From contig JAKMXF010000312.1 in the NCBI GenBank assembly GCA_024704765.1, positions 186,001 through 250,000 of the forward strand: 64,000 nucleotides of DNA, written 5' to 3'. The stretch's first letter is position 1. Each line of letters starts with the position of its first letter. Position numbers and translations under genes: made by a program. The notes beneath the pieces are model-generated. The model was given only the letters and a program-made list of their open reading frames with translations, was not told where the DNA came from and searched no databases. Shown piece by piece: positions 25,201-43,171 of this stretch. The DNA is from Oopsacas minuta (lineage: Eukaryota > Animalia > Porifera).

Positions 25201-28200
25201 ATAGCTTGTTAAGTTTATTTGTAAATATATTGCGAATTACAATTTGTATTGGAAAATTATCCAAATAATATTGCAGAAAAGTTCAGAAAACTGTTTCTCA
25301 ATATTTAAGTTGTTTGCCTTTCTTCTTCACAAAACATACAAATCCTAGCAATTCATAATACTTGGAATTACTTTACTGTTACTTAATTGACAGATTTTTA
25401 TAACAAAAGAATCAATTTGTAATGTTAACACCTTTTAATATATGTATTCATATTTGTAATAATAGGAAACTGAAAACTGAGACAAGAAAGCTGAGCTCGA
25501 CAATACATCCTCCTGCCACTTCATCTCTCAGAACTATTCGTGATAGATCGATCAAGAGTTCCCCGCACGTCAATGATCTTCATATTTGTTTGCTCTGCCT
25601 CAAAGCTATTATGAATAACACTGTAAGTTAATTGTGTCGTGTGCCACAAAGTCGACAATTCTACCCTTCAATTACTCCAGAACTATAAGTTTGTATAAAT
25701 ATATTCATAAGGTAAACTTCCCGAAAAAACACTTTTGGACACATTGGACGAGCCAGTAGCCCTTCGTTAAAACTCTTAGCAGTTCCATAGGTGCTAGAAA
25801 TGGCGACACCTCGAATATTTTCTGTTTCCCCAGGATTACTCAGGGGGTTATTCAACTGAAATACAGTTAAAGAGAGAGTTAGTCTAATTCTTAAACATTG
25901 CATATAGCATGAGGTTATGAATCATATCTAGACTATACCTCAAATATTGTAATCAATACAAGCTGGTTACTGACTAACTCTTATCAAACTCCTGATAATA
26001 TTGTTCAATATACATATGATAAAATATTTTGACTTGCAAACTGTAGTCGAGTCTATGAATTTCTTGATACACACCTACATAGCTTGTTTTAGGAGAAACA
26101 AGACAGAGATATCTAATATACTCCTTAGGTTTAGCCATATGTCAATCCCTACATAGTTTGCAACATGTTATTAGTACAAAACTAATTTGATTATTTATTG
26201 AATTAACTGGTTGGATACAATAACTACGCAATGTTATGTAATAACAAATTATTAATTTACAGACAGGACTACAAGCTATCCTAGGACACAGGGAATGTCT
26301 TACTCATATGACAAGAGTTATGCTCGTATCTCAGCTGAGGTTAGTGATAGCAATTAATAATAATACAGCCTACTAGTTGAGATAAAAACGCAATGGAATG
26401 TTGTTCTTTGGGGGGACAGTTTTGGTAATCCATACCATTTATCCCCGTCGATATTATCTAATGTTACTATTTTTAGAACAAGCACGCTTATCTTAGACAT
26501 TCTATCAGCTGTGTGTCATATTGAGGATCTTAACGGACACCAGAAAGTTATAGAAGCTGTAGACTCATTTTCACAGTCTAAAGGAGAAGCTCACAGATTC
26601 CAAACCCTCGTGTATCATTTCTATGATAATTCATGTCCTATCGAATTTAGAGTAAGTAATGAGGTGTTGTAGCTTGGAAGAGGTGTCTACTGTATTTACT
26701 CATTTTAGATCTGTTTATTATTGTTTGTTTGTTGTTTGTTGTTTAGATATCATGTTTGGGATTCATTTACTATCTTTGTAACTCTGCTCCTGATGTAAAA
26801 TACCGCGTCAGGTTATATCATGAATTCGCAGAGCTGGGTCTAGACGATTTCTTAGACGTGAGTGAAACATTTCTACTCATCAGCTGTTGATATTACCTCA
26901 GCTGAATATATGTCTGTACATTTGATATTTTGTTAAACTAGGGTCTGGATGAAGAAGAGACTCATGCCAGATTCTTAGAACTCTCAATCGCTTATAGAGA
27001 TAATAATATAGATGTCAAGGAGTTGGTGAGTTAATGTAATTACAGCAGAACAATAGTTATTCAATTGATATTACTCCGGTTAAAGAGGACAGATTTTGGC
27101 TGTCCGTTGGTGTTCGTGTTAACGAGGTTACATTGTTGTTTGTTTTATTGTTTGTTGTTGTTGTTAGCTTGACACCTACAATCTATCTGATGAGATGACT
27201 AGAGAGTTAGAAGATTTGAAATTAAAATCAGAAGAAGCGGAAAAGAAATACACAGCTTGTGAATTTGAATCAATCAAAAAAATAGGTTAGTCATAAGAAA
27301 TATTTACCTGTCCAGTTTAGAGGGACATTAACACCCTAAAAATCATAAAATACCCAATGGCATTACCTAATATTCCATGTCTCAATTCTAACTTTAGTTA
27401 ATATTCCGTCAGCAAACACTTATAATCGTATTAGTCATGAGTAGTATCCTTATCACATTATCTGGGATTATTCATGTGTTTTGAGCACTTTCAATCCCAG
27501 CCTTACCTCGTATCTTTTCTTATAATCTTCATTACTTAATATTTCCAAAGTTCTGTATTAAAATCACCTAAAATTATTAATACCTAACTCTCATTATTTT
27601 GCACATTTTTGTGTAGAATACAGCTATATTCTGTCAATACAAACAAATCATTACAAATTTGCATTTCTAACTTTATGAATCATTTCCTCCAAACCTAATC
27701 TCCTTTATTTATTAATAATCAGACATAGTTATCGCCAATTTCTACCTCTTAACTCTCACTTAACATCTTAACCTCGTGTTTGATTTCTCTAATAATAGAA
27801 CTCTATTGCGTGTATATTACAGTGCCCACATTGGTTAGCAATTTCTACACATAAGATAGCCCCGGGAAATTTGCCTAACAATCTATTGTGTATATATTCT
27901 ACCACACATCTACCCGCTATGTTAATGAAAGCTAAATGTCTCTACAATTCTAATTCAACTCATTGTCTATGAAAGCAGATAATATTTCTAGTCAGTTTAT
28001 GTGGCATTTCCTCATGTGTCGTCGTAGTGATTATATATATGAATATTCATAAATATTAGTCACCATAATTGGGTCAATTTGGCTGGAGCTGGATTGGCTC
28101 GATTACACATATAAGTGGAGGCGATTGTATTAGCCGAATAGTTTGTCAAGTAAGGGCAATTATTGATAGCACCAATCACAAGCTATTATTGATATACAGA

Positions 28201-31200
28201 CTAGCTTGACTGTCCTTTTATCAACCCCGAGGCTCGTCCCAGCGGCTCTTTCACCCCCCATTAACTTCATCTATGTATTCTAGCTAATCTTGAGCGTGAG
28301 TCTCAGCAGCTGACAGACAGGCTGGAGAAAGCAGAGCTGCAGTTAGAAGAGAAGAAGAAAGAAGAATCTATCCTATCCACTAGACTAGAGCAGCAGGCCG
28401 CTAATTATGAAGAGAAGCTTAAGAAGCAATCTACTGAGATTACTGTAAGTGAATTCATAGATATGTCATGCTATCCCAGGATTTTCCAAGGAGTTCCTCT
28501 CGTCTCCTTTGGCCCAATTTTGACCTCTTGTAATATTATTCATTTAACATAATATTTTAGCAATCACTAGCACTTGCCCCTGAAATCAAATCACCCATCA
28601 AGGACACTCCTCCATCTACAAATCAAACAGTAGTCCCTCCTGAACCTGAGAAGAGTATTGTTATACCCTCTCCTCCCCCAGACCTCCCTGAGATACAGTC
28701 CTCTATACCAGCACCTCCTCCTGATATAGGTACTAATCCACACGTTGCTAGGTAACAAATATGTGTTTATTTATTTGTTTATTTTTAGGAGATTTCAGTG
28801 GGAGTTCGAAGTCAAAAGATACTCCTAATTACACACAACCTATCTCGCTATCAGGTGAGAAGAGACGGATACAAACTAACTACAGGCTACCTGTGTTAAA
28901 TTGGTGTACTGTTACAAAGGCACAAGTTGATGGGACTATATTCTCTGAACTAGATGATGAAAAACTTCTTAAGGTTAGTTGTATACATGAGTGATTATTC
29001 ATATTTTAGCACCCTTGGACGGCAGACATAATATATAATCACATACTACATACCATGAATCATAGCACTCTGTTTCCATAGTTACCTCGTTAGTATTCGG
29101 CTACACCCCTTAGCGAGGGAGGCAATTATTAAAGGGTGCTAATAATGAATCAATACGATTATATTTATATGTTTATAGACTTTAGATTTCAGAGAGTTCG
29201 AAGAAACCTTCAAAACAAAAGCTCAACCCAAACAGGAACAAGTCAAGAAAGAGGGTCCCTCCTCCAAAGCCGTTAAGGTGTTACAACGTATAGGGACTCC
29301 TAAAGCTGTCCAACCTCCTGTCTTCCTCGAGACCAACCGCGTCAGGAATATAGGAATAGCTATGAAGAGATTTGGGAAAGATGCGGGGGACATCAGAAAT
29401 GCTATTAATAGAATGGATACCTGTGTATTGAATTCAGAATATGTTGAATTACTAGCTAAACTAGTTCCTAATGAAAATGAAGAGAAAGCTATGGACAAAT
29501 ACAATAAGGAATATTGTGATAAGAATGCTGCCAAACTTGTGAAGACCAAACCTAAATTGCTACAAGAGGAGAAGTTCTTACTTGAGGTGAGATTTGGTAA
29601 TATAACAAACACACAAACAAGAGACCGAACTAACGAACTCAGAACAATCAAATGAATGTACGAATGAACAAATAAACAAAATATATTCACCAACGTATTC
29701 CCCAATTTAGCTCCATTCAGTAGACAGATTGAGTGCTAAACTGGAAGTAATGCTATTTCTTTGTGGATGTGAAGACGAGCTAGAGAGACTACAAACTGTA
29801 AGTATCCTTTTAACTTAATTATCAATATTATAACACCTTGATATATGTATAGCCATAAATCCAGGGCTGAATGGTTAATGGGGTAGTGTTAATTATATGA
29901 TTGTGTCGATAAATGTGTCTACTAGCTAGTAGGATATTGCATAATATATAGTTACGAATATTTGTTCTATTTTTAGCAACTAGATTGTGCTAGCACTGCC
30001 TCACATGCAGTACTATCTTCACAGAGTTTTAAGAAGATAATGGAGTTGGTTCTTGCATTCGGGAATTATATGAATAGCTCAAAGAGGGGAGCAGTGTATG
30101 GATTCAGATTGGAAAGCCTGGATGTGGTTAGTTCTATTATATGCCTATGCGCTCATTAACTAACGATTTGTGTAATTGTTATTGCATTCGGATATGTAAA
30201 CCAAACTTGGTTATTCTTCTAAATAGTTAATATATCGGCTACATATTCAGATTGATGTGGTTCTGCCATTTATGTCGAGAACACTGACTCAGCTATCATA
30301 TATATCATTGGTTATATCGAAGTTATTATCATGGGGCCCTTGAGCTTCGATATAACAGGAGTTGACTAGATAGGATAACAGTTCGTAACTTCCATACTAT
30401 CCTATAGCTCAATTCAACTTTGTCCACTGATAAGAAGCAATCTCTCCTACACTATATAGCTAAGACAGTTAAAGACAGGAATCCAGAGTATACGGGATTT
30501 GTTACTGAGATGAGATATCTACAGAAAGCTAGTCTGGTCATTATGGATAATCTAGATGCTGATATACAGGTTTGTGCCACTTGACACCTCTGTTACAGTA
30601 TTATTGAACAATGGATTATATTCTAACTGTATTTGCTAGGATTTGATGAAACAGTGTGAAAGAGCTGTCAGAGAGTTAGTATATGACAAACAGAATACTG
30701 TATTGAAAAACTTTTTACTAATAAACGAGCCTAAAGTCACTAAACTAAGTGAGGACTACAAATTGGCTAAGGTTTGTTTTATTTATCTGTTACTTAGCAA
30801 GAGTTTATACTTTCAAACTATGCCACTTCACACCAAGCTTGAGTGTTACGAAATTACAAAATTATGTTCCACTGTTTTCTTCAATAATGGCGATAGAATT
30901 CGTGTGAATATTACTACATTTTTATTAGTCATTTTGGTGTCAATTCCCCCTTTTTGGTTCCATATTTAGTTCCAATTCAAATATTCGGTTAACATTGATG
31001 TATTCTATTTTTAGACAACATATCTTAAATGCGGGAAGTATCTAGGAGAGGATTCATCTTGTCTTAAGAGTAACACGATGTTCCAACAGCTGAATAAATT
31101 CAGACTACATTTTGAGGTGAGAAATGAAGTAATATATGTTGTGTGTGCGACTGATAGCGTCCAGGTGGCCCAAAGAGCTGGACAAATATTCATGTAAGAC

Positions 31201-32264
31201 TCCCCCGGCGGTATCCCCCTGTCTCTGGATCTAGGTTCCCTCTGTCGAGATTTTTCCATACTTATTGTGTCATATTGTATAGAGAGTTGAGAAAGAGAAT
31301 GAACACAGGAAAATGTTAGAGAAATCTCAAGAAGAGATAGCTATGAAGAGACAACGACCAAGTATTAGGAAAGCTGAAGAGAAAACTGTGAGTTACAAAC
31401 AAATAACAAACAATATGTTTGTTTACACTTCCCCATTAGATAGGAGATATGCAGCATGATGCAGCTTATGATGGAGCAGTAGATGACATAATACAAAGTA
31501 AGAATTACTTGTTTTAAGGATATTATTTAATTGATTAATTATCGCTGCTAAAATCATAGAGATCAAGAGCGGTCCATATCGTGCAGAGAATATGGTGAGT
31601 AGGAGACGTGACACTCCCAAGAGAAGAAGACAGAGAAGCCAAAGAGCCCTTACCTCTGAACAGTCCTTCTCTGAGGACTTACCCCGATCTGACAGCCTGT
31701 CAGGGATACAATCGTCTAATCGAGCTAGAGGAAGGAGTTGGGGACAACAGGGAGTGATTGTAAATCTAGAAAGTGATAAGAGTATACCTGAACTAACAGA
31801 AGAGTCTACTCAGGGAGAAGTACGAGCTAAGAAGGATGCTATGGGACAACCTATTCATGATTCAGATTCTAGTCAGGATGAATACCCCGGGAAAGGTAAG
31901 TACTGCCAAAGTAACAAATATTTCATAGGTTATATCGGAGTAATTATCACGGTCCCTTCAACTTCGATATAATCGGAATTATTATACACGTCTTTTAGGT
32001 ACCAAGCAAATCTGTGAGAGTAGAGAAGCACAAGATCTTGACAAACCTTCTCTATCCAATAAGAACCCTTCCTTTAATCCGGGAAATGTGTCCCCTACTC
32101 GTGTACTCATGGCTACAGAGGAACACGTGGCTAACAAACCACTTTTTGTGAATGACATAGCTGCCATGTTTGCTAAACCTGTGGCACAAGTGGATGCGTC
32201 AAGTGGTAAGAAAATAGAGTCAGATGATCCATTTCTTAAAAGTAGACCTTGGTTACAGAAATGA
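22202..32264 (+). CDS. FMNL: Formin-like (FMNL class) protein: GBD/FH3, coiled coil, weak FH1, FH2, DAD-like tail; many exons
   Basis: MGNN N-terminus (myristoylation-like); [15 protein letters not shown]; [10 protein letters not shown]; FH2 motifs [59 protein letters not shown]; stop at 32262-32264. Confidence 0.9.
22463..22613 (+). mobile_element. MITE family M1 in formin intron 1
   Basis: ctcctgttatatcgaagctgaagggaccgtg...ttactttgacggtttgggaccatatttgta...aagcgggtattt; TA flanks. Confidence 0.85.
23536..23613. repeat. 15-bp minisatellite, ~5 copies
   Basis: Unit ctatt(c/t)ataac(a/c)c(t/c)t, in a formin intron. Confidence 0.85.
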
Positions 32265-32370
32265 CCATATGGTATGAAGGATATGTAGAGTACACACACA
32301 AGCATTCAGTGAGGATTTGTTCGAGAGAATGGTTAGATTTTATTTATGCATTGTGGTTTGTAAATATTGC

Positions 32371-32372
<2 letters not shown>

Positions 32373-32434
<62 letters not shown>
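32373..32434. repeat. (TTA)n microsatellite, ~20 units
   Basis: Direct reading. Confidence 0.95.
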
Positions 32435-32715
32435 GTACGTATTAAGTCTGTTACTTATTTTCTAATATGATTAAACACAGATCCTCCCTTCTTGATTCAA
32501 GCTAATACAGTGGGAGCCGGTTAATCGAGACACCCCAGGAGTATGGTTCTATCCCAATAAAACAATTCTCGCTAATAACTGATATATTATTATTATTATT
32601 ATTTGTAAGTGAATTTCCCCGTTTATCCACCCATCTACCGATAAAGCAACTCCACTCTAAAGATATGCATGTTACAACCATTACATACACACTTATATAT
32701 TCAGCTAAATTAGTA

Positions 32716-35700
32716 ATGTCTTGTGAAAAGACTTTTCACAAGAGAAAGGAACTGAAGATTATGTTGCGTTATCTATTGACAAAACTGATCATGTGATAGC
32801 GTCAAAAGTAATAACTCTACAGAATACTGATGCAACTGGGTTATTTGATAACAGGGCAGGTTCTGAGTCTAAATCTTCAGAGAAATCGAAAGCGGAACAA
32901 GGAGACACTATCACTCATCCTCTTACCATAACAGAATCTGAAGCAACTGGGCTATTTGATAACAGGGCAGGTTCTGAGTCTAAATCTTCAGATGAATCGA
33001 AAGCGGAACAAGGAGAAGAGAATTTATTACGAGATAAGTTTCTCAGACTAAATCTTGATCAAGAAGAAATAGAGTTATTAATAGAACAGGGGGATAGGTT
33101 TGTCGAGAGACCACCTTTGCTCTTAGCTAGAAGGTTGAACATACATGTAGATAAAGCGAAGTTAATTATTGTAGCTCTTAAAGACTTTAAGAACCAAGAA
33201 CAAGTTAAAAATATATCAAAAGGCGATATTGATAAAATAGAAGAATGTTTGAAAGATCCCGAATTTTCGACTCCAGAAGATATTTCTTTGATTTCTGGGA
33301 TTGATTTACGCATTATTGTTAGATACTTACAAAATAAACCTTTAGATGACAAACAGAAAACTGAAATAAGAGAAAAATACAACACTGGATGCTCTATGAA
33401 TGATATTGTAATGATCTTAGGGCTACCAGAGATAAAGGTGAAGGAATATGTAGAGAGCACACTTCTTTCGTTTACTAGTGAAGATGGTAGGAAATGTTTG
33501 CAAATTATTCAGAGTAACTTCAGTGATTACACTTGTCCAGAAATCGAATTGAGAAGATTGATTACTTCTAACAATCTGAAGTTACAAGATAAATTGTGTT
33601 GTATTCTCCAAATACGAAATACAGAAGAGTATTTAAAGTTAAGACATTATTTTGAGAAATTTGAAGAATCAAAGTCATTTTTCCACATCAATACTGAATT
33701 AACCATGGAGGATATCTCTCTTATAAATCAGTACAGTCTCAGTGACATAGAACATCTCAGTATTAAACTTAATAAAGTAGAGAGTGCAATAAGAGAGTAT
33801 CTAGAACAATATCATCCAAACCAAGTAGTCAATCACAATAACTCACTATTGCAAAATGCATATATTCAACAATTTTTGGCAAATTTTGGAGGAAATCAGC
33901 TAACATTCCATTCATATAGAATGATAATTACAAACTCATTCGAAGAAATGATAAGAAACGCGGAGATTACTGAAAATCAAAACAGATTACAGAAAATCAA
34001 AGTATTTGATGACCTTTTACCACTGGCTTTTTATTACCTTAAGTGTAGTCTCCCTTTCAATGATCTAACACAGATAATTGCTAATGCGAGCAAGATGTTA
34101 CTCACTACACACGATTTATTCCATTTAATATTCCAATTATCAGATCCAGTATTAAAAGGGTTCTGTATTGAACATTACTCATTCAGTAATCCTGTTCCTT
34201 TTTATTACCCAAAACTACAAAAAACTTATCAACAAACACATGCAGAATTTACGATATGCAAAGAGCTATGGTACTCTATGCAACAGTTCAATGGGTTAGT
34301 CTCATTTGGGCTGGGAAGAGCTGGTTGGAATCCAATTGGAAAATCTCATTTACTTGACTTAATTTTTGAGACAGATTTTGTTAAAGGAAATCCTCAAAAC
34401 AGTGCTTTCCATTTCAACTCGATTGATATTCAAATGACTAAGAATTTGTTCGGTGAAAAGAAGGAAAATTCTGGTGCCGAATCTATCAAATGGGCTTATA
34501 TAGATTGTAATGGACATTCTAATAAGAATATTATTAAGATAGTATGTCAATACTTGGATATTGCATTGATTCAAATCACTAATCATGATTATGAAAATAA
34601 TAAGCAACTTCTGAATAACGACATCTACAAATTAACTAATTCTGTTAAACATGTATATTTACTCATCAGAGATTATCCGGGTAATGAAGTGAAGGTCGAA
34701 GTCAAGCAAACAGAACAGAAATCAATCAAAAATATTTTCATTCCCAATTTAACAAAACCTGATACGAATTTTAATTCTGTAATAAAGTCCCTGAAAGGAG
34801 TCGGTTATGATATCTTACATCCTAAATCTGAGACCTCGAAAATGATAGGAAGTGAGTTCATAGAGAATGTAATGAAAGATCTAGATCCTCATAGTTTGAA
34901 AGAAATTGAGTCAGAGAAAGTGCTGATTCAAAATATTACTGACTGTGTTAGTAAGTCAGCAAAATCTAGTAAAGTCGGTTTCTCATTTCTCCAATTCTAT
35001 CCTCTATACGTAGATTACATGAGTTGTTATCACAGAGCAAATTCAGAAACAGAATATCACCAAATTAAAGTGTTGAATAATCAAAGGGGGATACTAGCTT
35101 CGAAACTAAATAAAACGAATATGGGAGATATAGTAAAGTATTTCAATGATATCATCTGTAGAGAAAATTCCTCACTTATCATGTGGAAATTATCACAACA
35201 TTTATCTTTGCTCTCAAAACAGATAAATTTTGATAAAAATAGGATAATTGAGCAGAAAAACGATAAATACACAATAGAAATTCTATGGAGAGAGGCTTTA
35301 CTGTCGTATAAGTATTGTACTACTACAAAGGATTTTCGTGGAGAAAGATATATCGATAGATTTGGATGTAATTATAGCAACCATGTAGAGAGGGGAGAAC
35401 CATTCGAACTAATTGATGGAGACAATCTCCGTTTCTTTAATCAAGACATTGATAACCTATTATCTAGGATGTACCAAAGGCAGTTTGAAAAATTAAAGTC
35501 GATCAATAAAGACCAGAAAATCTCAATGAAGCAAGCCCCGATTGTAGTTAGTATAGTTGGGCCTCAGAGTTCAGGAAAATCTACTCTCTTGAACTACTCC
35601 TTTGGCTGCAAGTTCCTAACTAGTGCGGGAAGATGTACAAGAGGGATATACGCTTCTCTCTCCAAGCTAAGTCACTCTGTGAACCTCATGAACCAGTTAC

Positions 35701-38700
35701 TTATATTGGATACAGAAGGATTAGATGCCATTGAGAGAGGAAATATTAAGGACACATCTTTAATTCATTTCGATAGGACAATGGTTTTATTCTGTCTGGC
35801 AGTCTCACAAGTTGTGATTATTAATGTAAGAGGAGATATAGGTGTAGAAATGCAGAATCTTTTACAGATTTGCGCTTATTCTCTAAACAAACTGAAAGTA
35901 AGGAAAGTAACCGCACCCCAGATATTCTTTGTTCTTAATCAACAAGCTGATCCCGATCCAGACAAACATCTCGACTCAATAAACATTTTGATGGAAAAAT
36001 TAAATAGAGAATCCAATTTAATTGATACCGAAAGGGCTAAGATGTCAGATTTAATACACATCTCAAGAGAGAATCTGTTTGTTCTTCCTTCAGCGTTCAA
36101 CTCAGAACAAATCAATAAACCAGGTTTGAATCTTTTTGATTCAAAAATAATCAAACTCTCTCCAACTATTACTTTTGCTGATAAATGTGCAGATTTACGT
36201 TTTGCAATCATTAAACAGCTGTACAGCATGTCCTTGGATAAAAGAACCCCTTTCCAAACGATGAGTGAATGGATGAAAATGTCTGGCACGATATGGGACA
36301 CAATTATCAGATATCAAGATATTGTCAAATATAAAAATGTTGAGGAAATGATTTGCAGTAACTTCCTTAAGAATATAATATCTGAATTAATGGACACACA
36401 TATTTACTGTCACAAAGACAAATTTCTTGAAATGACAGAAAACTTTCTGCGAGAATTCAAACAATTGACATTCTTAATAATTCTGATGAAACATTGACAC
36501 AAATCAGGGTCGAGTTTAATGACTTCTTCCAAACACATACAAATCAGTGTTTAATGGAATATTCCAACCGCTGTCAAAATGAAATATCCCTCAAGAAGAT
36601 GAATCATCTTATTGATGAGTCAAAGTTAAATTTATCACGTCACATTTATACGGAGAAGAAAACTTACGATGATAAACTCAAATTCCAAATTTCTGCTGCG
36701 TTAATGGAAAAAAAGCTTTCAGGAAGTATTGGGAAGTTCCAAGAAGCAATCATTAAAAATGTTGATAATTATTTGGAATTCAATGTTGAGCAGCAAACAC
36801 AAGCTTTTGAAGACACTTGGATTCAGTGCTTTGGAGATGAGGACAAAAATGAAGAGGTGTTTGAACGTGATGAAACTTTTAACAATTTACATTCTCTTTT
36901 CATGATGGAGTCTATTAGTATGGAAAAGAGCTCAGAAATACGTGAATATTCTTAGAAACGATTTTCAAATGGATAAAATAATCAATGATGTTAAAGACAT
37001 TATTTTGACAAGATTCTTAGAAGATTCTAGCACATTGAAGGGTATAGAACAGTTCATTTTCCCTTGTAAAGGTAATACTATTCCCATAAAAGATATGACT
37101 CCCTTTCCTGGAAAACAGTCATATGACTATCTTGCTAAGAATTCATTATTCTCAATTGATAATAGTATTTTGTACGTAATGAGAACTAAACCGAAACTGA
37201 AGCTTTACGAATGGGTTCCACTACAATGCAGGCCTCTAATTAAGTATTGTTCTGGTTATTATAATCATGCAGACATTAATTGGATGGAATGGCATGAGGA
37301 TAAGCAAATATTATATTTAGCTGCTGTCTTAAGATCTCCACGCGCTCCCAATAGGAGTACATGGGAAGTATTAATCGAAGACATTTCAAGTCATCTCCAA
37401 TATTGTGTTAGATATGACCCAAATGTTTCTCCAGCAACTATCAAAGAGATAGTTTACTTTCTATGCTCTACAATTAATACTGTTAATCATGAAATAAACT
37501 GTATACAAGCTAAACTGAGTAATGCAGCAGAGAGGACACTTTCAACATTCGCGTTTGCATATGCATTCAAATCTCTCTGGGAAACTAAGACAAATAAAAG
37601 ATTAGAAAATAAACTCAAAACAGAGAAAGAAAAGATTAACTTGCTTCAGTACTTTCTACAAAAAATAGAAATTCGTAAAATGTTCCGTGGAGATTGGGAT
37701 CGCGAGAAAATGAAAAATAGTGATCATGAAATCTCCAGCGTATTCGCTTTAGATTTGTTAGGACGTATAAAGAGAGGGGTACTAACTACAGAACAACCTA
37801 TTATTGAAAATCTCTTCTCTGAGCGAAAAGGTGAACTAACACACAGATCCATATTTCTTTGTGCAAAATCTAGATTATCAAAGAGCTTGAAACACCTGAT
37901 CAGGAGATATTTAGTGAGAATAATTTTGTTGTTCAATATGTTTGTAATCGAAACGAACTGCTAAGAAATATTTTCTTTGAGAAATGGTCAATTGTTGCAG
38001 AAGAACTTTATCAGGAAGTAATTCCAGAAATTTCCAAGAAAATTAAAAAACAGGTACAAGTCATTAAGATGGTTCTCAGTACTTTACTGGATGACCTTGA
38101 ATCTATTAATGCTGGGAGTTCAGAAAATAAAGCGTTCGATTCAGACAGTAATTTCGAGATAGCTGACAAGGTTTCAGTGGGTTCTGAGGTAAAGGTAAAG
38201 GTAAAGGAAAGTCCCTTCAAAGCTATGGTACTGTATTTACGTATGTATCTAGACCCAAATGTTACTCCAGGAAAATTCAGAGATTATTTTACTGAAACAT
38301 TCAAGGTTGATGGTGTAAAAATGAAAAAATCTGATACATACAAATTATGTGATAAGCCGAATAATCCAAACTATATCCTCGATGAAGACATCTTCAAAAA
38401 GTTGGATTATACAAAGATGTTTACCTGTGAAAATATTTTTAACATCTCAGAATATGTCACCAAATTTCTATCCATTTTAGATAGCTTTATATTTGAATTG
38501 ACAAGAGAGGAATTTACTGAACTGGTTCTTCTAATACAACAAAATTTCGAGAGGGATGTTATCGGTTGTCCCAATCAATGTCCTAGTTGCGGTAAGCTCT
38601 GTGAGAGAGAACTGCATCCAAATGATGGCAAATGTCAGATTAAAACTGGTCACCAAATCTGTTCGATGGGTGGTAAGGTTTGGAATGATAAAAACAGAGC

Positions 38701-39634
38701 TGCAGTTTTATACATGTGTGATGATTACAAAGATAATACTAACGTTGTCCTACAGGGAAGAGCTATGACCTGGGGACAGTTTAGGATATTGTGGGAGAAG
38801 GAATGGGACTGGACGATGCCGAACGATAAGAGCTACCTGGACTTACAGGACAATAATCGTGATAATATGATAAAAATATGGAACAAATTCGGGAAGGGAA
38901 TTTTGAATTATTACTCAACCAGAGGAACTCAGATTTTTTTTGTACCCTATGATACATTTCAAGAAACTCTTTCCATCAAATATTACATTTGTTTCGTTAT
39001 TGACGGGACAGTGTCAATGGCTACGGAAATCGGGAAGGCTCGTATTTCTGTTGGACAATTCATGGAGAAATATAAAGAACGTGCTGTTAATTCAGAATTT
39101 AAAATCATTATCTATCGAGATCACTGTGACAAGAAAATTATAGAAAAGTATCCTTTTGGTAACAAGTTCACACCAAAACACGTGGAAATACAGGAATTCC
39201 TTAGTACAGTTAAAGCTATGGGAGGAGGAGACTACCCTGAAGCAGTGTTAGATGGCTTAGCTACTGCAACTAGTCAATGTGACTGGGAAACTAGTCAAGG
39301 AGTGAAAAACATCATAATTCATATATTTGACGCACCCCCACATGGAGATTTTCCAGACCATACATTGCATCACTCTAAAAGCAACCCTAAACATTGTTGT
39401 TGTTGTAATCAAGGTACCCTGTGTCAATTTGATTGGGATAGAGATGTATGGGATAATATTGTGAAGTTTAATATCCAATACAATGGGATAAATACTGGAC
39501 CGAAATTCCCCGAATTCGAAGCTGCGATGAAACGGAAATTAGGAGAACTTTGTGCAGATTTTCAGACTGTTGGACAGGAAGTGGTTAACGAAGCAATTCT
39601 CCAGATTTTTATTCAGAATAAATTGGATTGTTAA
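32716..39634 (+). CDS. Very large inducible GTPase (VLIG/GVIN-URGCP-like) with N-terminal HTH-like repeats and C-terminal VWA domain; ~2306 aa after repairing four frameshifts
   Basis: G1 GPQSSGKSTLLN, G2 GRCTRG, G3 LILDTEG; upstream degenerate G-like box (VSFGLGRAGWNPIGKSHLL); GVIN-type Cys cluster CPNQCPSCGKLC; VWA motifs FVIDGTVSM, YRDHCD, GGGDYPEAVLDGL, HIFDAPPHG. ORF pieces overlap in different frames with no splice signals. Confidence 0.85.
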
Positions 39635-40696: not shown

Positions 40697-43171
40697 ATGG
40701 GTGTAAAACATCTATGGGCCATCCTACAGGGTGCAGGAACAAGTATTGATTATGACTCACTACAGGGTCAAGTAATATCTGTAGATATAAACATATGGCT
40801 ACACCAAATTCAATCACATCGTATCGGACAAAACCCCCACGCCTACTTGATTGATCTCTTGAAACGAATATGCAAACTTTTGAATTACGGAATTAAACCA
40901 ATTTTTGTTTTTGACGGGGCTCATCCTAAACTGAAAAGAGACACAATAATTTCGCGAGATTTGAGACGGAAGAATGCTCAGAAACAGCATGACGAGGCTA
41001 AATTTAAACATATCTTAAAAACTATCCATTCACAGTTGTTACAAGGACAGGTTCCATTCATACCCCCCTCAAATTCCAGCGGTCCCTCTGACCTATTTGA
41101 GCTACCAACCTCCTCTACTGTTTTTGAAAATTCTGACGATGAATATCCATATGATGAACTTACTTCAATCGACCAAATTATCCGATTAAACCCCAAATCT
41201 GAAGAGTTTTCAAATCTCCCCTCAGATATACAAGTCAGTATTCTGAAGCTGAAACAAAAAATAAGCATAGCTTCCATATCAAATGACCAAACTGGTATCC
41301 AAGATGATAGCCATAAGCCGGAGGATATTTCTAACAGGCAGATACAGAATCTTTTGGAACGCAGGGAAATTCGGCAGAAAATCGATAGCATAAATAACGA
41401 GCATCGCGAAAAAATAAATTCTTCAATAATTGGAATTGAAACTGACGGGTTTGACGTGCAGTCAGATAAAATAATCAGTCACGACAAGAAACATGTCATA
41501 ATAGTTAAAAATCAAAACTCCACACCTCTTAAAATTTCTAATGAGACAAATAATTACCCTCTTGAGGATAATTCGGCATACACCCCTGTGACGGATCTGG
41601 GTCGCTATTACGATGGTACCGATATCCCTGAACCACAAAACGGAGCTCTAACCCAAGAGATGACTAGTGATACCATGGATGTCATCAATCCATTCCATTT
41701 GGTGAAAGTTTCATTTACAAATGGCACAGAAATATACGCGGAACAGGCGCCAAACGGGGAATTAACCTCTATAACCTCTTATCATAGTCAATCAGGAATT
41801 GATGGAATCAATCCGGGCTGTGTATCCTCCTCTTTTCACACCACAGACGAGTTATCGCCTCCTCTTGAAGGTATCCACTTGGCCCCTAATCTCCACGGTT
41901 CAAAAAGATCCAAAACAGCTAAGGATAATATAATCAAGATGTCAGCTGATTTGGGATTAGTCATACCACCGAAAAGTGCGGTTAAATCTACGGAATGTTT
42001 GTCGCATGTTTCAGATGATGTTTTTCACAATACCCCTTCTTCAACACCTATTGCCAAACGGGTCTGTGTACAAGATACCCCCGCGATGGAGGGTGACACT
42101 AAACTGGAACTATACACTGTTACAGTTCCAAATTCGTTTTCAGAAGAATCAATTCCTCCGACTCCTATATCACCAAGTTATGACACTACAGACCAACTCA
42201 ACCCCTGTCTGGAGCCTCTACCCCCTACACCTTCTAGTGAGGAGTACAGCCCGTCCAATGAGGCCATACAGTCCTCTGAACCTAGCATTCTGATTGGTTC
42301 AGATCCAATTCTAGCCACGAGTTCATCGCTAGAAGATATCCGCCGTGAAATGTCTGAATTGACAAAAGTAGTAACTCGTAACCAGAGAATAATGCAAGGG
42401 ATTAATCGAGAGATACAAGACGCTGTGATGGAGCTTCTCGCTGTATTCGGCATTCCTTACATAGTAGCGCCATTCGAGGCTGAAGCACAGTGTGCTAATC
42501 TGGAACTAAACAAAGTTACAACTGGAACTATAACCGATGACTCAGATATATTTCTTTTCGGGGGCCATACCGTGTACCGGCATTTCTTTAACATGAAGAG
42601 TCGGTTAGGTACAGAGTGCTATTCCATGAATGACATCAATAAGTGCTTGGAGCTGAGGAGAGAGGATTTAATTCGATTAGCGTTCCTCTTAGGGTGTGAT
42701 TATACCGAAGGTGTTAAGGGGATTGGTCCTAAACATGCGATTCCGCTTTTGAAATCTTTCAAATCCGAAGGCCTCCAACCTCTGACTGATATCCTCTCTG
42801 TCGCAGAGACCGCTAAGATGCGGGATCAGCCCCCTTGTGGGGGAGAGGACGGTTTATTGGCACGTGTTGATTTCCCTCGGGGCTTCCCTGATGAGAATGT
42901 GTGGAATGCGTTTTTGAAACCTTTAGTAGATCCAGTTCCAATTGAAGAATTCAAATGGGGAACAATCGAAGTTGATAAATTCGTGAATTTTTCAAAAAAA
43001 TATTTTAATTGGAAAGAGAGTCAAGCAAGAGAACAAATAACACCTGTTATTAGGCGCCAAAGTACTCCCAAACAGGTCCAATTAAAAATCCCCCGTACTA
43101 CCCATAGACCCGTCCCCTCAGCCCCACCTAAAGCTAACTATTCACGCGCCAAATTAAGCGATTCTGATTGA
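40697..43171 (+). CDS. ERCC5: XPG/Rad2 structure-specific endonuclease, intronless, 824 aa
   Basis: N domain MGVKHLW, SVDINIWLHQ, FVFDG; long spacer; I domain PFEAEAQCA, TDDSDIFLFG, LGCDYTEGVKGIG; catalytic acidic residues intact. Confidence 0.93.
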   Translation: MGVKHLWAILQGAGTSIDYDSLQGQVISVDINIWLHQIQSHRIGQNPHAYLIDLLKRICKLLNYGIKPIFVFDGAHPKLKRDTIISRDLRRKNAQKQHDEAKFKHILKTIHSQLLQGQVPFIPPSNSSGPSDLFELPTSSTVFENSDDEYPYDELTSIDQIIRLNPKSEEFSNLPSDIQVSILKLKQKISIASISNDQTGIQDDSHKPEDISNRQIQNLLERREIRQKIDSINNEHREKINSSIIGIETDGFDVQSDKIISHDKKHVIIVKNQNSTPLKISNETNNYPLEDNSAYTPVTDLGRYYDGTDIPEPQNGALTQEMTSDTMDVINPFHLVKVSFTNGTEIYAEQAPNGELTSITSYHSQSGIDGINPGCVSSSFHTTDELSPPLEGIHLAPNLHGSKRSKTAKDNIIKMSADLGLVIPPKSAVKSTECLSHVSDDVFHNTPSSTPIAKRVCVQDTPAMEGDTKLELYTVTVPNSFSEESIPPTPISPSYDTTDQLNPCLEPLPPTPSSEEYSPSNEAIQSSEPSILIGSDPILATSSSLEDIRREMSELTKVVTRNQRIMQGINREIQDAVMELLAVFGIPYIVAPFEAEAQCANLELNKVTTGTITDDSDIFLFGGHTVYRHFFNMKSRLGTECYSMNDINKCLELRREDLIRLAFLLGCDYTEGVKGIGPKHAIPLLKSFKSEGLQPLTDILSVAETAKMRDQPPCGGEDGLLARVDFPRGFPDENVWNAFLKPLVDPVPIEEFKWGTIEVDKFVNFSKKYFNWKESQAREQITPVIRRQSTPKQVQLKIPRTTHRPVPSAPPKANYSRAKLSDSD

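What the first reader, a model, noticed from the sequence alone, without database searches (positions are those of the whole stretch)
32716..39634. VLIG GTPase fused to a VwkA-type VWA domain
After the GVIN-type Cys cluster, where vertebrate GVIN1 essentially ends, the frame continues into a ~210-aa VWA domain: ICFVIDGTVSM (DxTxS MIDAS), IIIYRDHCD, GGGDYPEAVLDGL and IIHIFDAPPHG. This motif set characterises the VWA of Dictyostelium VwkA-like alpha-kinases rather than integrin or collagen VWAs. Established: VLIGs belong to the GBP/atlastin-related immunity GTPases. Inference: a sensor-GTPase-VWA immune protein with a metal-dependent ligand- or partner-binding module.
Basis: partly seen in the sequence, partly recalled or inferred. 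Interest (0 to 1): 0.72.

Follow-up and report, generated by a model that had tools for sequence, protein, structure and literature searches.

The report
Glass-sponge giant GTPase with VWA tail
This stretch of the glass sponge Oopsacas minuta holds one intronless gene for a roughly 2,300-residue "very large GTPase" of the interferon-type family that ends in a metal-binding VWA domain; the design is real and shared with many sponge paralogs and some ciliates, but this copy's reading frame is broken three or four times in the assembly.

Summary
All four quoted VWA motifs are in the last open piece, at 38987-39346. Pfam calls a VWA_4 domain there and a URGCP/VLIG GTPase domain upstream.

The "gene" is not one ORF. 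It is four open pieces joined by three ±1 frame changes (near 36470-36480, 36930-36950 and 37880-37890). A fourth change is needed to use the ATG at 32716. None of these is an intron.

The pieces are colinear with uninterrupted single-ORF homologs of 1,963-2,276 aa that carry both domains. A Vazella pourtalesii transcript crosses all three breaks and runs into the VWA. The fusion is therefore real.

It is not unique to sponges. Tetrahymena malaccensis, a EukProt protist and several environmental proteins have the same order: GTPase, Cys cluster, VWA.

The VWA belongs to the "DAPPHG" subgroup that also holds alpha-kinase (VwkA-like) VWAs. In my tree it falls outside their clade, and it has its own Cys insert.

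The public annotation splits the gene into three models, one fused to a formin.

The scan has noted the same architecture on other DNA of this genome (s1-237710, s1-211854).

Immune function and MIDAS-dependent partner binding are inferences.

The parts
32716..32726 (+). Candidate ATG start in a different frame from the main ORF. Using it needs one more frame change before 32793.
   Evidence: The main frame has no ATG at the place where homologs start. The closest intact homolog, P0246, has a 93-aa N-terminal extension of similar length.
32727..36494 (+). Open piece 1 (1256 codons). It holds an acidic/Ser-rich leader, HTH-like repeats, a first GTPase-like domain and the VLIG GTPase domain.
32832..32990 (+). 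Two identical 16-aa motifs (ATGLFDNRAGSESKSS) 111 nt apart in the N-terminal leader.
   Evidence: TRF reported no array.
34323..34346 (+). P-loop-like motif GWNPIGKS of an upstream, probably degenerate, first large-GTPase domain.
   Evidence: Several homologs have two GxxxxGKS motifs about 410 aa apart. An AlphaFold3 model of human GVIN1 has two LG domains (bioRxiv 10.1101/2025.03.24.645074).
35346..36008 (+). URGCP/VLIG-type GTPase domain. The P-loop GPQSSGKST is at 35559-35585 and DTEG at 35709-35720.
   Evidence: PF25683 97.8 bits; also RHD3_GTPase and GBP.
36470..36480 (+). Frame break 1 (frame 2 to frame 1). There is no GT in the 64-nt overlap of the two open frames, so it is not an intron.
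36431..36952 (+). Open piece 2 (174 codons), helical region.
36930..36950 (+). Frame break 2 (frame 1 to frame 2).
36906..37961 (+). Open piece 3 (352 codons), helical region.
37880..37890 (+). Frame break 3 (frame 2 to frame 1). The public model LOD99_6003 bridges it with a 50-nt 'intron' (37830-37879) that deletes codons conserved in homologs.
37874..39634 (+). Open piece 4 (586 codons plus TAA stop). It holds the end of the helical region, the Cys/His cluster and the VWA.
   Evidence: AF2 model mean pLDDT 82.7.
38564..38728 (+). Conserved Cys/His cluster (C-x3-C-x2-C-x3-C ... H ... C ... GH.C ... C); probable zinc site.
   Evidence: The Cys/His columns are invariant across 49 homologs. The same motif occurs in the non-sponge VLIG-like proteins P0235-P0237, P0311 and P0317.
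38975..39613 (+). VWA_4 domain. The MIDAS residues are DGTVS at 39002-39016, GGGDYPE at 39221-39241 and DAPPHG at 39329-39346.
   Evidence: The model shows alternating strand/helix elements. Foldseek matches integrin beta I-like domains at E 4e-9 and giant-virus VWA proteins at E 7e-13.
39347..39436 (+). Cys-rich insert after DAPPHG (H...S...CCCC at 39395-39406, then C...FDW). It is conserved in the sponge family.
   Evidence: The counterpart in ciliate and environmental VLIG-VWA proteins is GCPCG; alpha-kinase VWAs have no Cys there.

Best explanation
The locus is a single intronless gene of about 6.9 kb in Oopsacas minuta. It belongs to the VLIG/GVIN/URGCP giant-GTPase family. Its order of parts is: an acidic leader, HTH-like repeats, a degenerate first GTPase-like domain, a canonical large GTPase domain, a helical body of about 800 aa, a conserved Cys/His cluster, and a C-terminal VWA_4 domain with a complete MIDAS motif set and a Cys-rich insert. 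It is one copy of a large, tandemly duplicated family in glass sponges. Some paralogs in that family carry the VWA and others stop exactly before it. The same module order occurs in ciliates and in unplaced environmental eukaryote-like sequences, so the fusion is older than sponges or has moved between lineages. In this assembly the frame is interrupted by three single-base-type shifts, with a fourth near the start. This is either uncorrected indel error or a very young pseudogene. Inferred mechanism: by analogy with GVIN1 and the GBPs, the protein would oligomerise on a target surface in a GTP-dependent way. The VWA would use its MIDAS metal to clamp an acidic residue of a partner or target protein. 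The Cys motifs would bind zinc, or the CCCC run would be lipidated. What is shown is the domain content, colinearity, conservation and distribution. The function is inferred.
For: Domains: (PF25683 at 97.8 bits, PF25106 at 35.2 bits). Colinearity with intact homologs that carry both domains: P0127 (2109 aa, one ORF at L001 3001-9330), P0168, P0174 and P0187 (2196 aa), P0212 (1963 aa) and P0246 (2276 aa). mRNA-level support in another glass sponge: Vazella pourtalesii Trinity transcript P0241 (1113 aa) covers the equivalent of 36279-39613 in one frame, VWA included. Family size and arrays: 1453 proteins at E<=1e-5 among the 8000 candidates scored; three VLIG genes in a row in L004. Module boundary: VWA-less paralogs end at the VWA start with no remnant downstream. 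Conservation: the MIDAS and Cys columns are invariant or nearly so in 49 homologs. Fold: AF2 pLDDT 82.7 and VWA matches. Outside sponges: P0303 (Tetrahymena malaccensis), P0311 (EukProt; URGCP_GTPase E 9.5e-27 plus VWA_2), P0299, P0314, P0319 and P0352 have GTPase, then Cys cluster in some, then VWA with DxTGSM / GGGDxPE / DAPPHG. Functional analogy: human GVIN1 forms an antibacterial coat (bioRxiv 10.1101/2025.03.24.645074).
Against: This copy has no continuous ORF and no in-frame ATG at the homologous start, so it may make no full-length protein. No experiment links any sponge VLIG to immunity. The model's pTM of 0.51 gives no information on how the VWA sits against the rest of the protein. 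The taxa of most homologs (ENA, Logan and JGI contigs) are not given by the tools, so I infer 'glass sponge family' from Oopsacas and Vazella only.
Confidence: 0.8

Rival explanations
1. This copy is a young pseudogene. The three or four frame shifts are real, and the locus makes at most truncated products, such as a protein of about 1,250 aa ending at 36494 without the Cys cluster or VWA.
For: There are three frame changes plus a missing in-frame start. The assembly was Illumina-polished with Pilon (PMC10280926), which should remove most indel errors. None of the breaks lies in a long homopolymer. Many fragmentary paralogs exist in other assemblies too.
Against: There are no in-frame stop codons in about 6.9 kb, although 5.4% of random substitutions would create one. 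All invariant family residues are kept. A second O. minuta paralog (L006) shows the same pattern of exactly three frame changes and no stops. Related assemblies have intact ORFs of 2,100-2,276 codons, and one 2,639-aa gene call was seen but not examined. An indel-only pattern in two copies fits uncorrected long-read errors in a multi-copy family.
Confidence: 0.4
2. The GTPase part and the VWA part are separate genes, as in the public annotation. That annotation has a 2450-aa formin-GTPase model, a 133-aa model and the 870-aa LOD99_6003.
For: The NCBI annotation of JAKMXF010000312.1 lists three models.
Against: The model borders coincide with the frame breaks. The 'intron' at 37830-37879 removes codons conserved in homologs. 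The homologs are single ORFs that start with Met just before the HTH-like region, with no formin attached. The Vazella transcript crosses all three break points.
Confidence: 0.04
3. The family is not an immune system. It could be a housekeeping membrane- or cytoskeleton-remodelling GTPase like atlastin or RHD3, with the VWA serving as a constitutive assembly module.
For: The GTPase domain also hits RHD3_GTPase (54.5 bits) and GBP. Vertebrate URGCP is not known as an immune effector (my own knowledge). VWA domains serve many intracellular assemblies.
Against: The family is massively expanded in a lineage-specific way, forms tandem arrays, varies in presence of the VWA and includes many broken copies. 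This is the birth-and-death pattern typical of immune gene families rather than housekeeping genes. That is an inference.
Confidence: 0.25

Closest known systems
Vertebrate VLIG / GVIN1 and URGCP (Pfam PF25683, URGCP-like GTPase domain)
   Same: A giant protein that is single-exon here. The large GTPase domain scores above the family cut-off. A second, degenerate P-loop lies upstream, like the two LG domains modelled for human GVIN1. A long helical body follows. The C-terminal Cys cluster is shared with other VLIG-like proteins.
   Different: It carries an extra C-terminal VWA_4 domain and an N-terminal array of HTH-like repeats. It comes from a sponge, which has no interferon system. No vertebrate sequence was compared directly here.
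Alpha-kinase VwkA-like proteins (Alpha_kinase PF02816 plus VWA_4 PF25106), for example Fusarium P0076
   Same: The same VWA motif set: DxT/SxSM, Y(R/T)DHCD, GGDYPE and DAPPHG. They are among the nearest non-sponge VWA hits.
   Different: There is no kinase domain. The sponge VWAs form a separate, long-branched clade. Kinase VWAs have P.GHP.D after DAPPHG, where the sponge domain has H..S..CCCC..C.
Ciliate and environmental VLIG-like GTPase-VWA proteins (P0303 Tetrahymena malaccensis, P0311, P0299, P0314, P0319, P0352)
   Same: The same module order: GTPase, helical body, Cys cluster (in P0311 and P0317), then a VWA with DAPPHG followed by a Cys motif.
   Different: Identity is only 22-45% in local matches. 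Lengths and N-termini differ. The Cys motif after DAPPHG is GCPCG rather than CCCC. Their VWAs do not group with the sponge clade in the tree, where the backbone is unresolved.
Integrin beta I-like (beta A) domains
   Same: They are the best solved-structure matches of the modelled VWA (Foldseek E 4e-9, about 250 aligned columns). Both have a DxSxS-type MIDAS with an acidic residue from the next loop and a D at the end of beta-4.
   Different: Identity is 12-16% and rmsd 6-8 A. The sponge domain is cytosolic in context, with no hybrid, PSI or EGF domains. ADMIDAS and SyMBS sites were not examined.

Membership tests
VLIG / GVIN / URGCP giant GTPases | URGCP-like GTPase domain (PF25683) above Pfam's gathering score | tested here: met
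   97.8 bits against a cut-off of 55, E 7.5e-28, at window 35346-36008.
VLIG / GVIN / URGCP giant GTPases | Intact G1 (GxxxxGKS/T) and G3 (DxxG) nucleotide-binding motifs | tested here: met
   GPQSSGKST at 35559-35585 and DTEG at 35709-35720.
VLIG / GVIN / URGCP giant GTPases | Very large protein (over 1,600 aa) encoded without introns | tested here: inconclusive
   About 2,300 codons are colinear with single-ORF homologs. In this assembly the frame is broken three to four times, and reads could not be consulted.
VLIG / GVIN / URGCP giant GTPases | Two LG domains, as in the AlphaFold3 model of human GVIN1 | tested here: inconclusive
   A second P-loop-like motif, GWNPIGKS, lies 412 aa upstream, and some homologs have two motifs. 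No fold prediction of that region was made.
VLIG / GVIN / URGCP giant GTPases | C-terminal Cys cluster shared with family members outside sponges | tested here: met
   The motif (I/V)GCxxxCPxCGxxC...H.C..GH occurs in P0235-P0237 and, with small changes, in P0311 and P0317. Vertebrate GVIN1 itself was not compared.
VLIG / GVIN / URGCP giant GTPases | Induction by infection or interferon-like signals | not testable with these tools
VWA domain, VWA_4 (PF25106) | Profile match above the gathering score | tested here: met
   35.2 bits against 27. Homologs score 42-45 bits.
VWA domain, VWA_4 (PF25106) | MIDAS residues (DxS/TxS, an acidic or Thr residue from the alpha3-alpha4 loop, Asp after beta-4) | tested here: met
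   D-G-T-V-S, GGGDYPE and D of DAPPHG are present. These columns are invariant or nearly invariant across sponge, fungal and bacterial sequences.
VWA domain, VWA_4 (PF25106) | Rossmann-like alpha/beta VWA fold | tested here: met
   In the AF2 model most 10-residue blocks over residues 368-570 have pLDDT of about 76-94, with alternating strands and helices. Foldseek gives probability 1.00 to integrin beta I-like and viral VWA domains.
VWA domain, VWA_4 (PF25106) | Divalent-cation binding | not testable with these tools
   Needs the protein.
VwkA-type (alpha-kinase-associated) VWA | Shared motif set GGGDxPE and DAPPHG | tested here: met
VwkA-type (alpha-kinase-associated) VWA | Placement inside the clade of alpha-kinase VWAs | tested here: not met
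   the sponge VWAs form their own clade (SH-aLRT 100). The alpha-kinase VWAs sit in a different 15-row clade (SH-aLRT 94). The backbone between them is unresolved.
VwkA-type (alpha-kinase-associated) VWA | Alpha-kinase catalytic domain in the same protein | tested here: not met
   No Alpha_kinase hit in any piece or in the intact homologs.

The most novel reading that the evidence does not exclude
The order GTPase, Cys cluster, VWA is the ancestral design of the VLIG/GVIN family. It would predate animals, being shared by ciliates and glass sponges, with vertebrate GVIN1/URGCP as VWA-less derivatives. The VWA with its Cys motif would be the module that recognises the target or recruits the effector. 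Sponge paralogs with and without it would then form a natural swap experiment on how giant GTPase coats choose their targets.
Probability: 0.25. Interest if true: 0.7.

Novelty: new variant of a known kind. Interest (0 to 1): 0.5.

Why it matters
Giant VLIG/GVIN GTPases are the least understood of the interferon-type GTPases. A function for human GVIN1, an antibacterial coat, was reported only in 2025, and how it finds its target is unknown. A branch of the family with a conserved metal-dependent adhesion module at its tail offers a concrete handle on partner or target binding. It is found in a very early-branching animal and in ciliates, and natural VWA-plus and VWA-minus paralogs sit side by side. 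It also suggests the family is far older than vertebrate interferon signalling. For genome annotation, this family is badly mis-modelled in the public O. minuta annotation: the gene is split, and one part is fused to a formin.

Tried and rejected
- **Introns as the cause of the frame changes:** rejected. The overlaps of the open frames are only 64, 47 and 88 nt. The first holds no GT. Homolog alignments run straight through all three.
- **The annotated intron at 37830-37879:** rejected. It starts with GT and ends with AG, but it removes codons conserved in homologs.
- **Reads:** The choice between assembly error and pseudogene stays open.
- **Third word search:** using P0237 region 1600-1845 to reach named vertebrate GVIN1 returned only the query itself.
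- **PDB sequence search with the C-terminal profile:** it gave only a marginal collagen VI VWA hit.
- **Cluster look-ups of the environmental hits:** most returned no names or taxa. The species behind the ENA assemblies ERZ25071281 and ERZ25766962 were not identified.
- **TRF:** it found no tandem array in the N-terminal leader, although two identical 16-aa motifs are there.
- **VWA tree:** it cannot say whether the VLIG-VWA fusion arose once, because the backbone is unresolved and 'other VLIG' VWAs fall in several places.
- **Joined protein:** The four pieces were searched separately, and intact homologs were used for whole-protein questions.
Full report
**What is in the sequence**

The window comes from the glass sponge Oopsacas minuta. 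The last open piece is 100% identical to NCBI protein LOD99_6003 on contig JAKMXF010000312.1 of GCA_024704765.1.

Between 32716 and 39634 on the + strand there is no single ORF. There are four long open stretches in alternating frames:
- 32727-36494 (1256 codons)
- 36431-36952 (174 codons)
- 36906-37961 (352 codons)
- 37874-39631 (586 codons, then a TAA stop)

The main frame has no ATG where homologs begin.

**Domains**

- Pfam finds URGCP_GTPase (PF25683, 97.8 bits against a cut-off of 55) in piece 1. RHD3_GTPase and GBP match the same stretch.
- Pfam finds VWA_4 (PF25106, 35.2 bits against 27) in piece 4.
- The GTPase has an intact P-loop (GPQSSGKST) and DTEG.
- A second P-loop-like motif (GWNPIGKS) lies 412 residues upstream. 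This recalls the two LG domains modelled for human GVIN1 (bioRxiv 10.1101/2025.03.24.645074).
- Before the VWA there is a Cys/His cluster (38564-38728). Its Cys and His columns are invariant in 49 homologs.

**Are the frame changes introns?**

No. The open frames overlap by only 64, 47 and 88 nt. The first overlap holds no GT. Intact homologs align straight across each junction, with the window's translation switching frame inside conserved sequence.

The public annotation handles the breaks by splitting the gene into three models:
- a 2450-aa model that fuses the upstream formin (Drf_GBD, FH3, FH2) to the GTPase part
- a 133-aa model
- the 870-aa LOD99_6003, which bridges the third break with a 50-nt intron (37830-37879) that deletes conserved codons

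**Is the fusion real?**

Yes. Word searches with the pieces found a very large family: 1453 proteins at E<=1e-5 among the 8000 candidates scored. Many predicted proteins of 1,700-2,196 aa carry PF25683 and PF25106 together.

- P0127 (2109 aa) and P0212 (1963 aa) are each one uninterrupted ORF on long contigs.
- P0168, P0174 and P0187 (2196 aa) and P0246 (2276 aa) align end to end with the four window pieces in order, at 38-62% identity.
- A Trinity transcript of another glass sponge, Vazella pourtalesii (P0241, 1113 aa), covers the equivalent of 36279-39613 in one frame. It spans all three break points and the VWA.

The last point is mRNA-level evidence for one message, though in a relative and not at this locus.

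**Family structure**

The genes sit in tandem arrays. L004 holds three in a row, one of them with a VWA. Some long paralogs (P0121, P0144, P0143, P0137, P0154) end within a few residues of the point where the VWA starts. For the two whose flanking DNA was fetched (P0121, P0144), no VWA remnant lies downstream. Other VLIG-like proteins (P0235-P0237) also stop after the Cys cluster. The VWA is therefore a discrete module that is present in some members and absent in others.

**Is this copy intact or dead?**

For a pseudogene:
- There are three or four breaks.
- The assembly was Pilon-polished (PMC10280926).
- No break lies in a long homopolymer.

For assembly error:
- There is not one in-frame stop in 6.9 kb, although 5.4% of random substitutions would make one.
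- All family-invariant residues are kept.
- A second O. minuta paralog (L006) shows the same pattern of exactly three frame changes and no stops.
- Related assemblies hold intact ORFs.

I put the odds near 55:45 for an intact gene. I could not check that claim and do not count it as evidence.

**What kind of VWA is it?**

An AF2 model of the last piece, built with 49 homologs, has mean pLDDT 82.7 and a clear alpha/beta domain over residues 368-570. Foldseek's best solved matches are integrin beta I-like domains (E 4e-9). Its best viral matches are giant-virus VWA proteins (E 7e-13).

An exhaustive HMMER search with the C-terminal profile gave 47 hits at E<=1e-30, which are the sponge family. 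Thousands of VWA hits follow. The nearest non-sponge VWAs share the consensus DxTGSM ... YRDH ... GGGDxPEAV.DGL ... DAPPHG ... GCPCG. Six of the 64 scanned carry an Alpha_kinase domain.

In a maximum-likelihood tree of 101 VWA domains:
- The sponge VWAs form one clade (SH-aLRT 100) on a long branch.
- That clade sits inside a 73-row group (SH-aLRT 90) that also holds the alpha-kinase clade (SH-aLRT 94).
- The VWA proteins that the word search found outside the sponge family, mostly bacterial by their source names, fall largely apart from this group.
- The order of the subgroups is unresolved.

Kinase VWAs have P.GHP.D after DAPPHG, where the sponge domains have H..S..CCCC..C. "VwkA-type" is therefore right at the level of the subgroup. 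It is not right as a specific sister relationship.

**Distribution beyond sponges**

The same search turned up long proteins with a VLIG-like GTPase and a C-terminal VWA:
- P0303: Tetrahymena malaccensis, 2261 aa.
- P0311: a EukProt/UniParc entry, 3183 aa, with URGCP_GTPase at E 9.5e-27. It is glutamine-rich like the Tetrahymena protein.
- P0299: 1724 aa, labelled as a Paceibacteria MAG, which I doubt.
- P0314, P0319 and P0352.

In P0299 a single local alignment runs from the region that holds the Cys cluster in the sponge protein into the VWA. P0311 and P0317 carry the family's Cys cluster. In P0299, P0303, P0314, P0317 and P0319, DAPPHG or DSPPHG is followed by a CPC motif, mostly GCPCG. The module order is therefore conserved far outside sponges.

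**Mechanism (inferred)**

By analogy with GBPs and GVIN1, the GTPase and helical body would drive nucleotide-dependent assembly on a target. The VWA would use its MIDAS metal to bind an acidic side chain of a partner or target. The Cys/His cluster probably binds zinc. The CCCC run could bind metal or be acylated. An immune role is suggested only by homology and by the birth-and-death pattern of the family.

**Novelty**

Searches of the held literature found nothing on a VLIG with a VWA, or on VLIGs in sponges. The O. minuta genome paper mentions neither GTPases nor von Willebrand domains. The architecture is visible in database predictions, and other windows of this scan have noted it. I rate it a new variant of a known kind, of moderate interest. 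This particular copy adds little beyond its intact relatives.

Noticed in passing
window about 26969-36497 (L003 1-9529): The public gene model upstream is a 2450-aa chimera joining a formin (Drf_GBD, Drf_FH3, FH2) to the VLIG GTPase part. It is probably a gene-prediction artefact caused by the missing in-frame ATG.
   Followed up: partly
L006 3160-9944 (JAKMXF010000311.1): A second O. minuta VLIG-VWA paralog is also split into three public models. It also shows exactly three frame changes and no in-frame stops.
   Followed up: partly
window 32832-32879 and 32943-32990: Two identical 16-aa motifs (ATGLFDNRAGSESKSS) lie in an acidic/Ser-rich N-terminal leader that has no in-frame Met. TRF reports no array.
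   Followed up: partly
window 39395-39406: A run of four consecutive cysteines sits inside the VWA, just after DAPPHG. It is conserved across the sponge family. Ciliate and environmental VLIG-VWA proteins have GCPCG at the same place, and alpha-kinase VWAs have no Cys there.
   Followed up: partly
L008 1-15779: A VLIG-like GTPase-VWA protein (P0319, 1971 aa) sits on an 85-kb metagenome scaffold packed with small unannotated ORFs on both strands, plus a DSPc phosphatase and an LRR protein. The layout looks more like a giant virus or a compact protist genome than an animal.
   Followed up: no
L004 1-14483: A tandem array of three VLIG genes in a related assembly: a 2639-aa member with a VWA, then a 2160-aa member without one, then a 1932-aa member.
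   Followed up: partly
L010 and L011 (P0299): An identical 1724-aa VLIG-like GTPase-VWA protein is deposited in a MAG labelled Candidatus Pacebacteria and in a second assembly (GCA_003202625.1). The bacterial label is probably a binning error.
   Followed up: no
window 40697-43171: The next gene downstream is a single-exon XPG-family nuclease (824 aa). It is followed by a Ras-like GTPase and an importin, so the VLIG gene sits among ordinary housekeeping genes.
   Followed up: no
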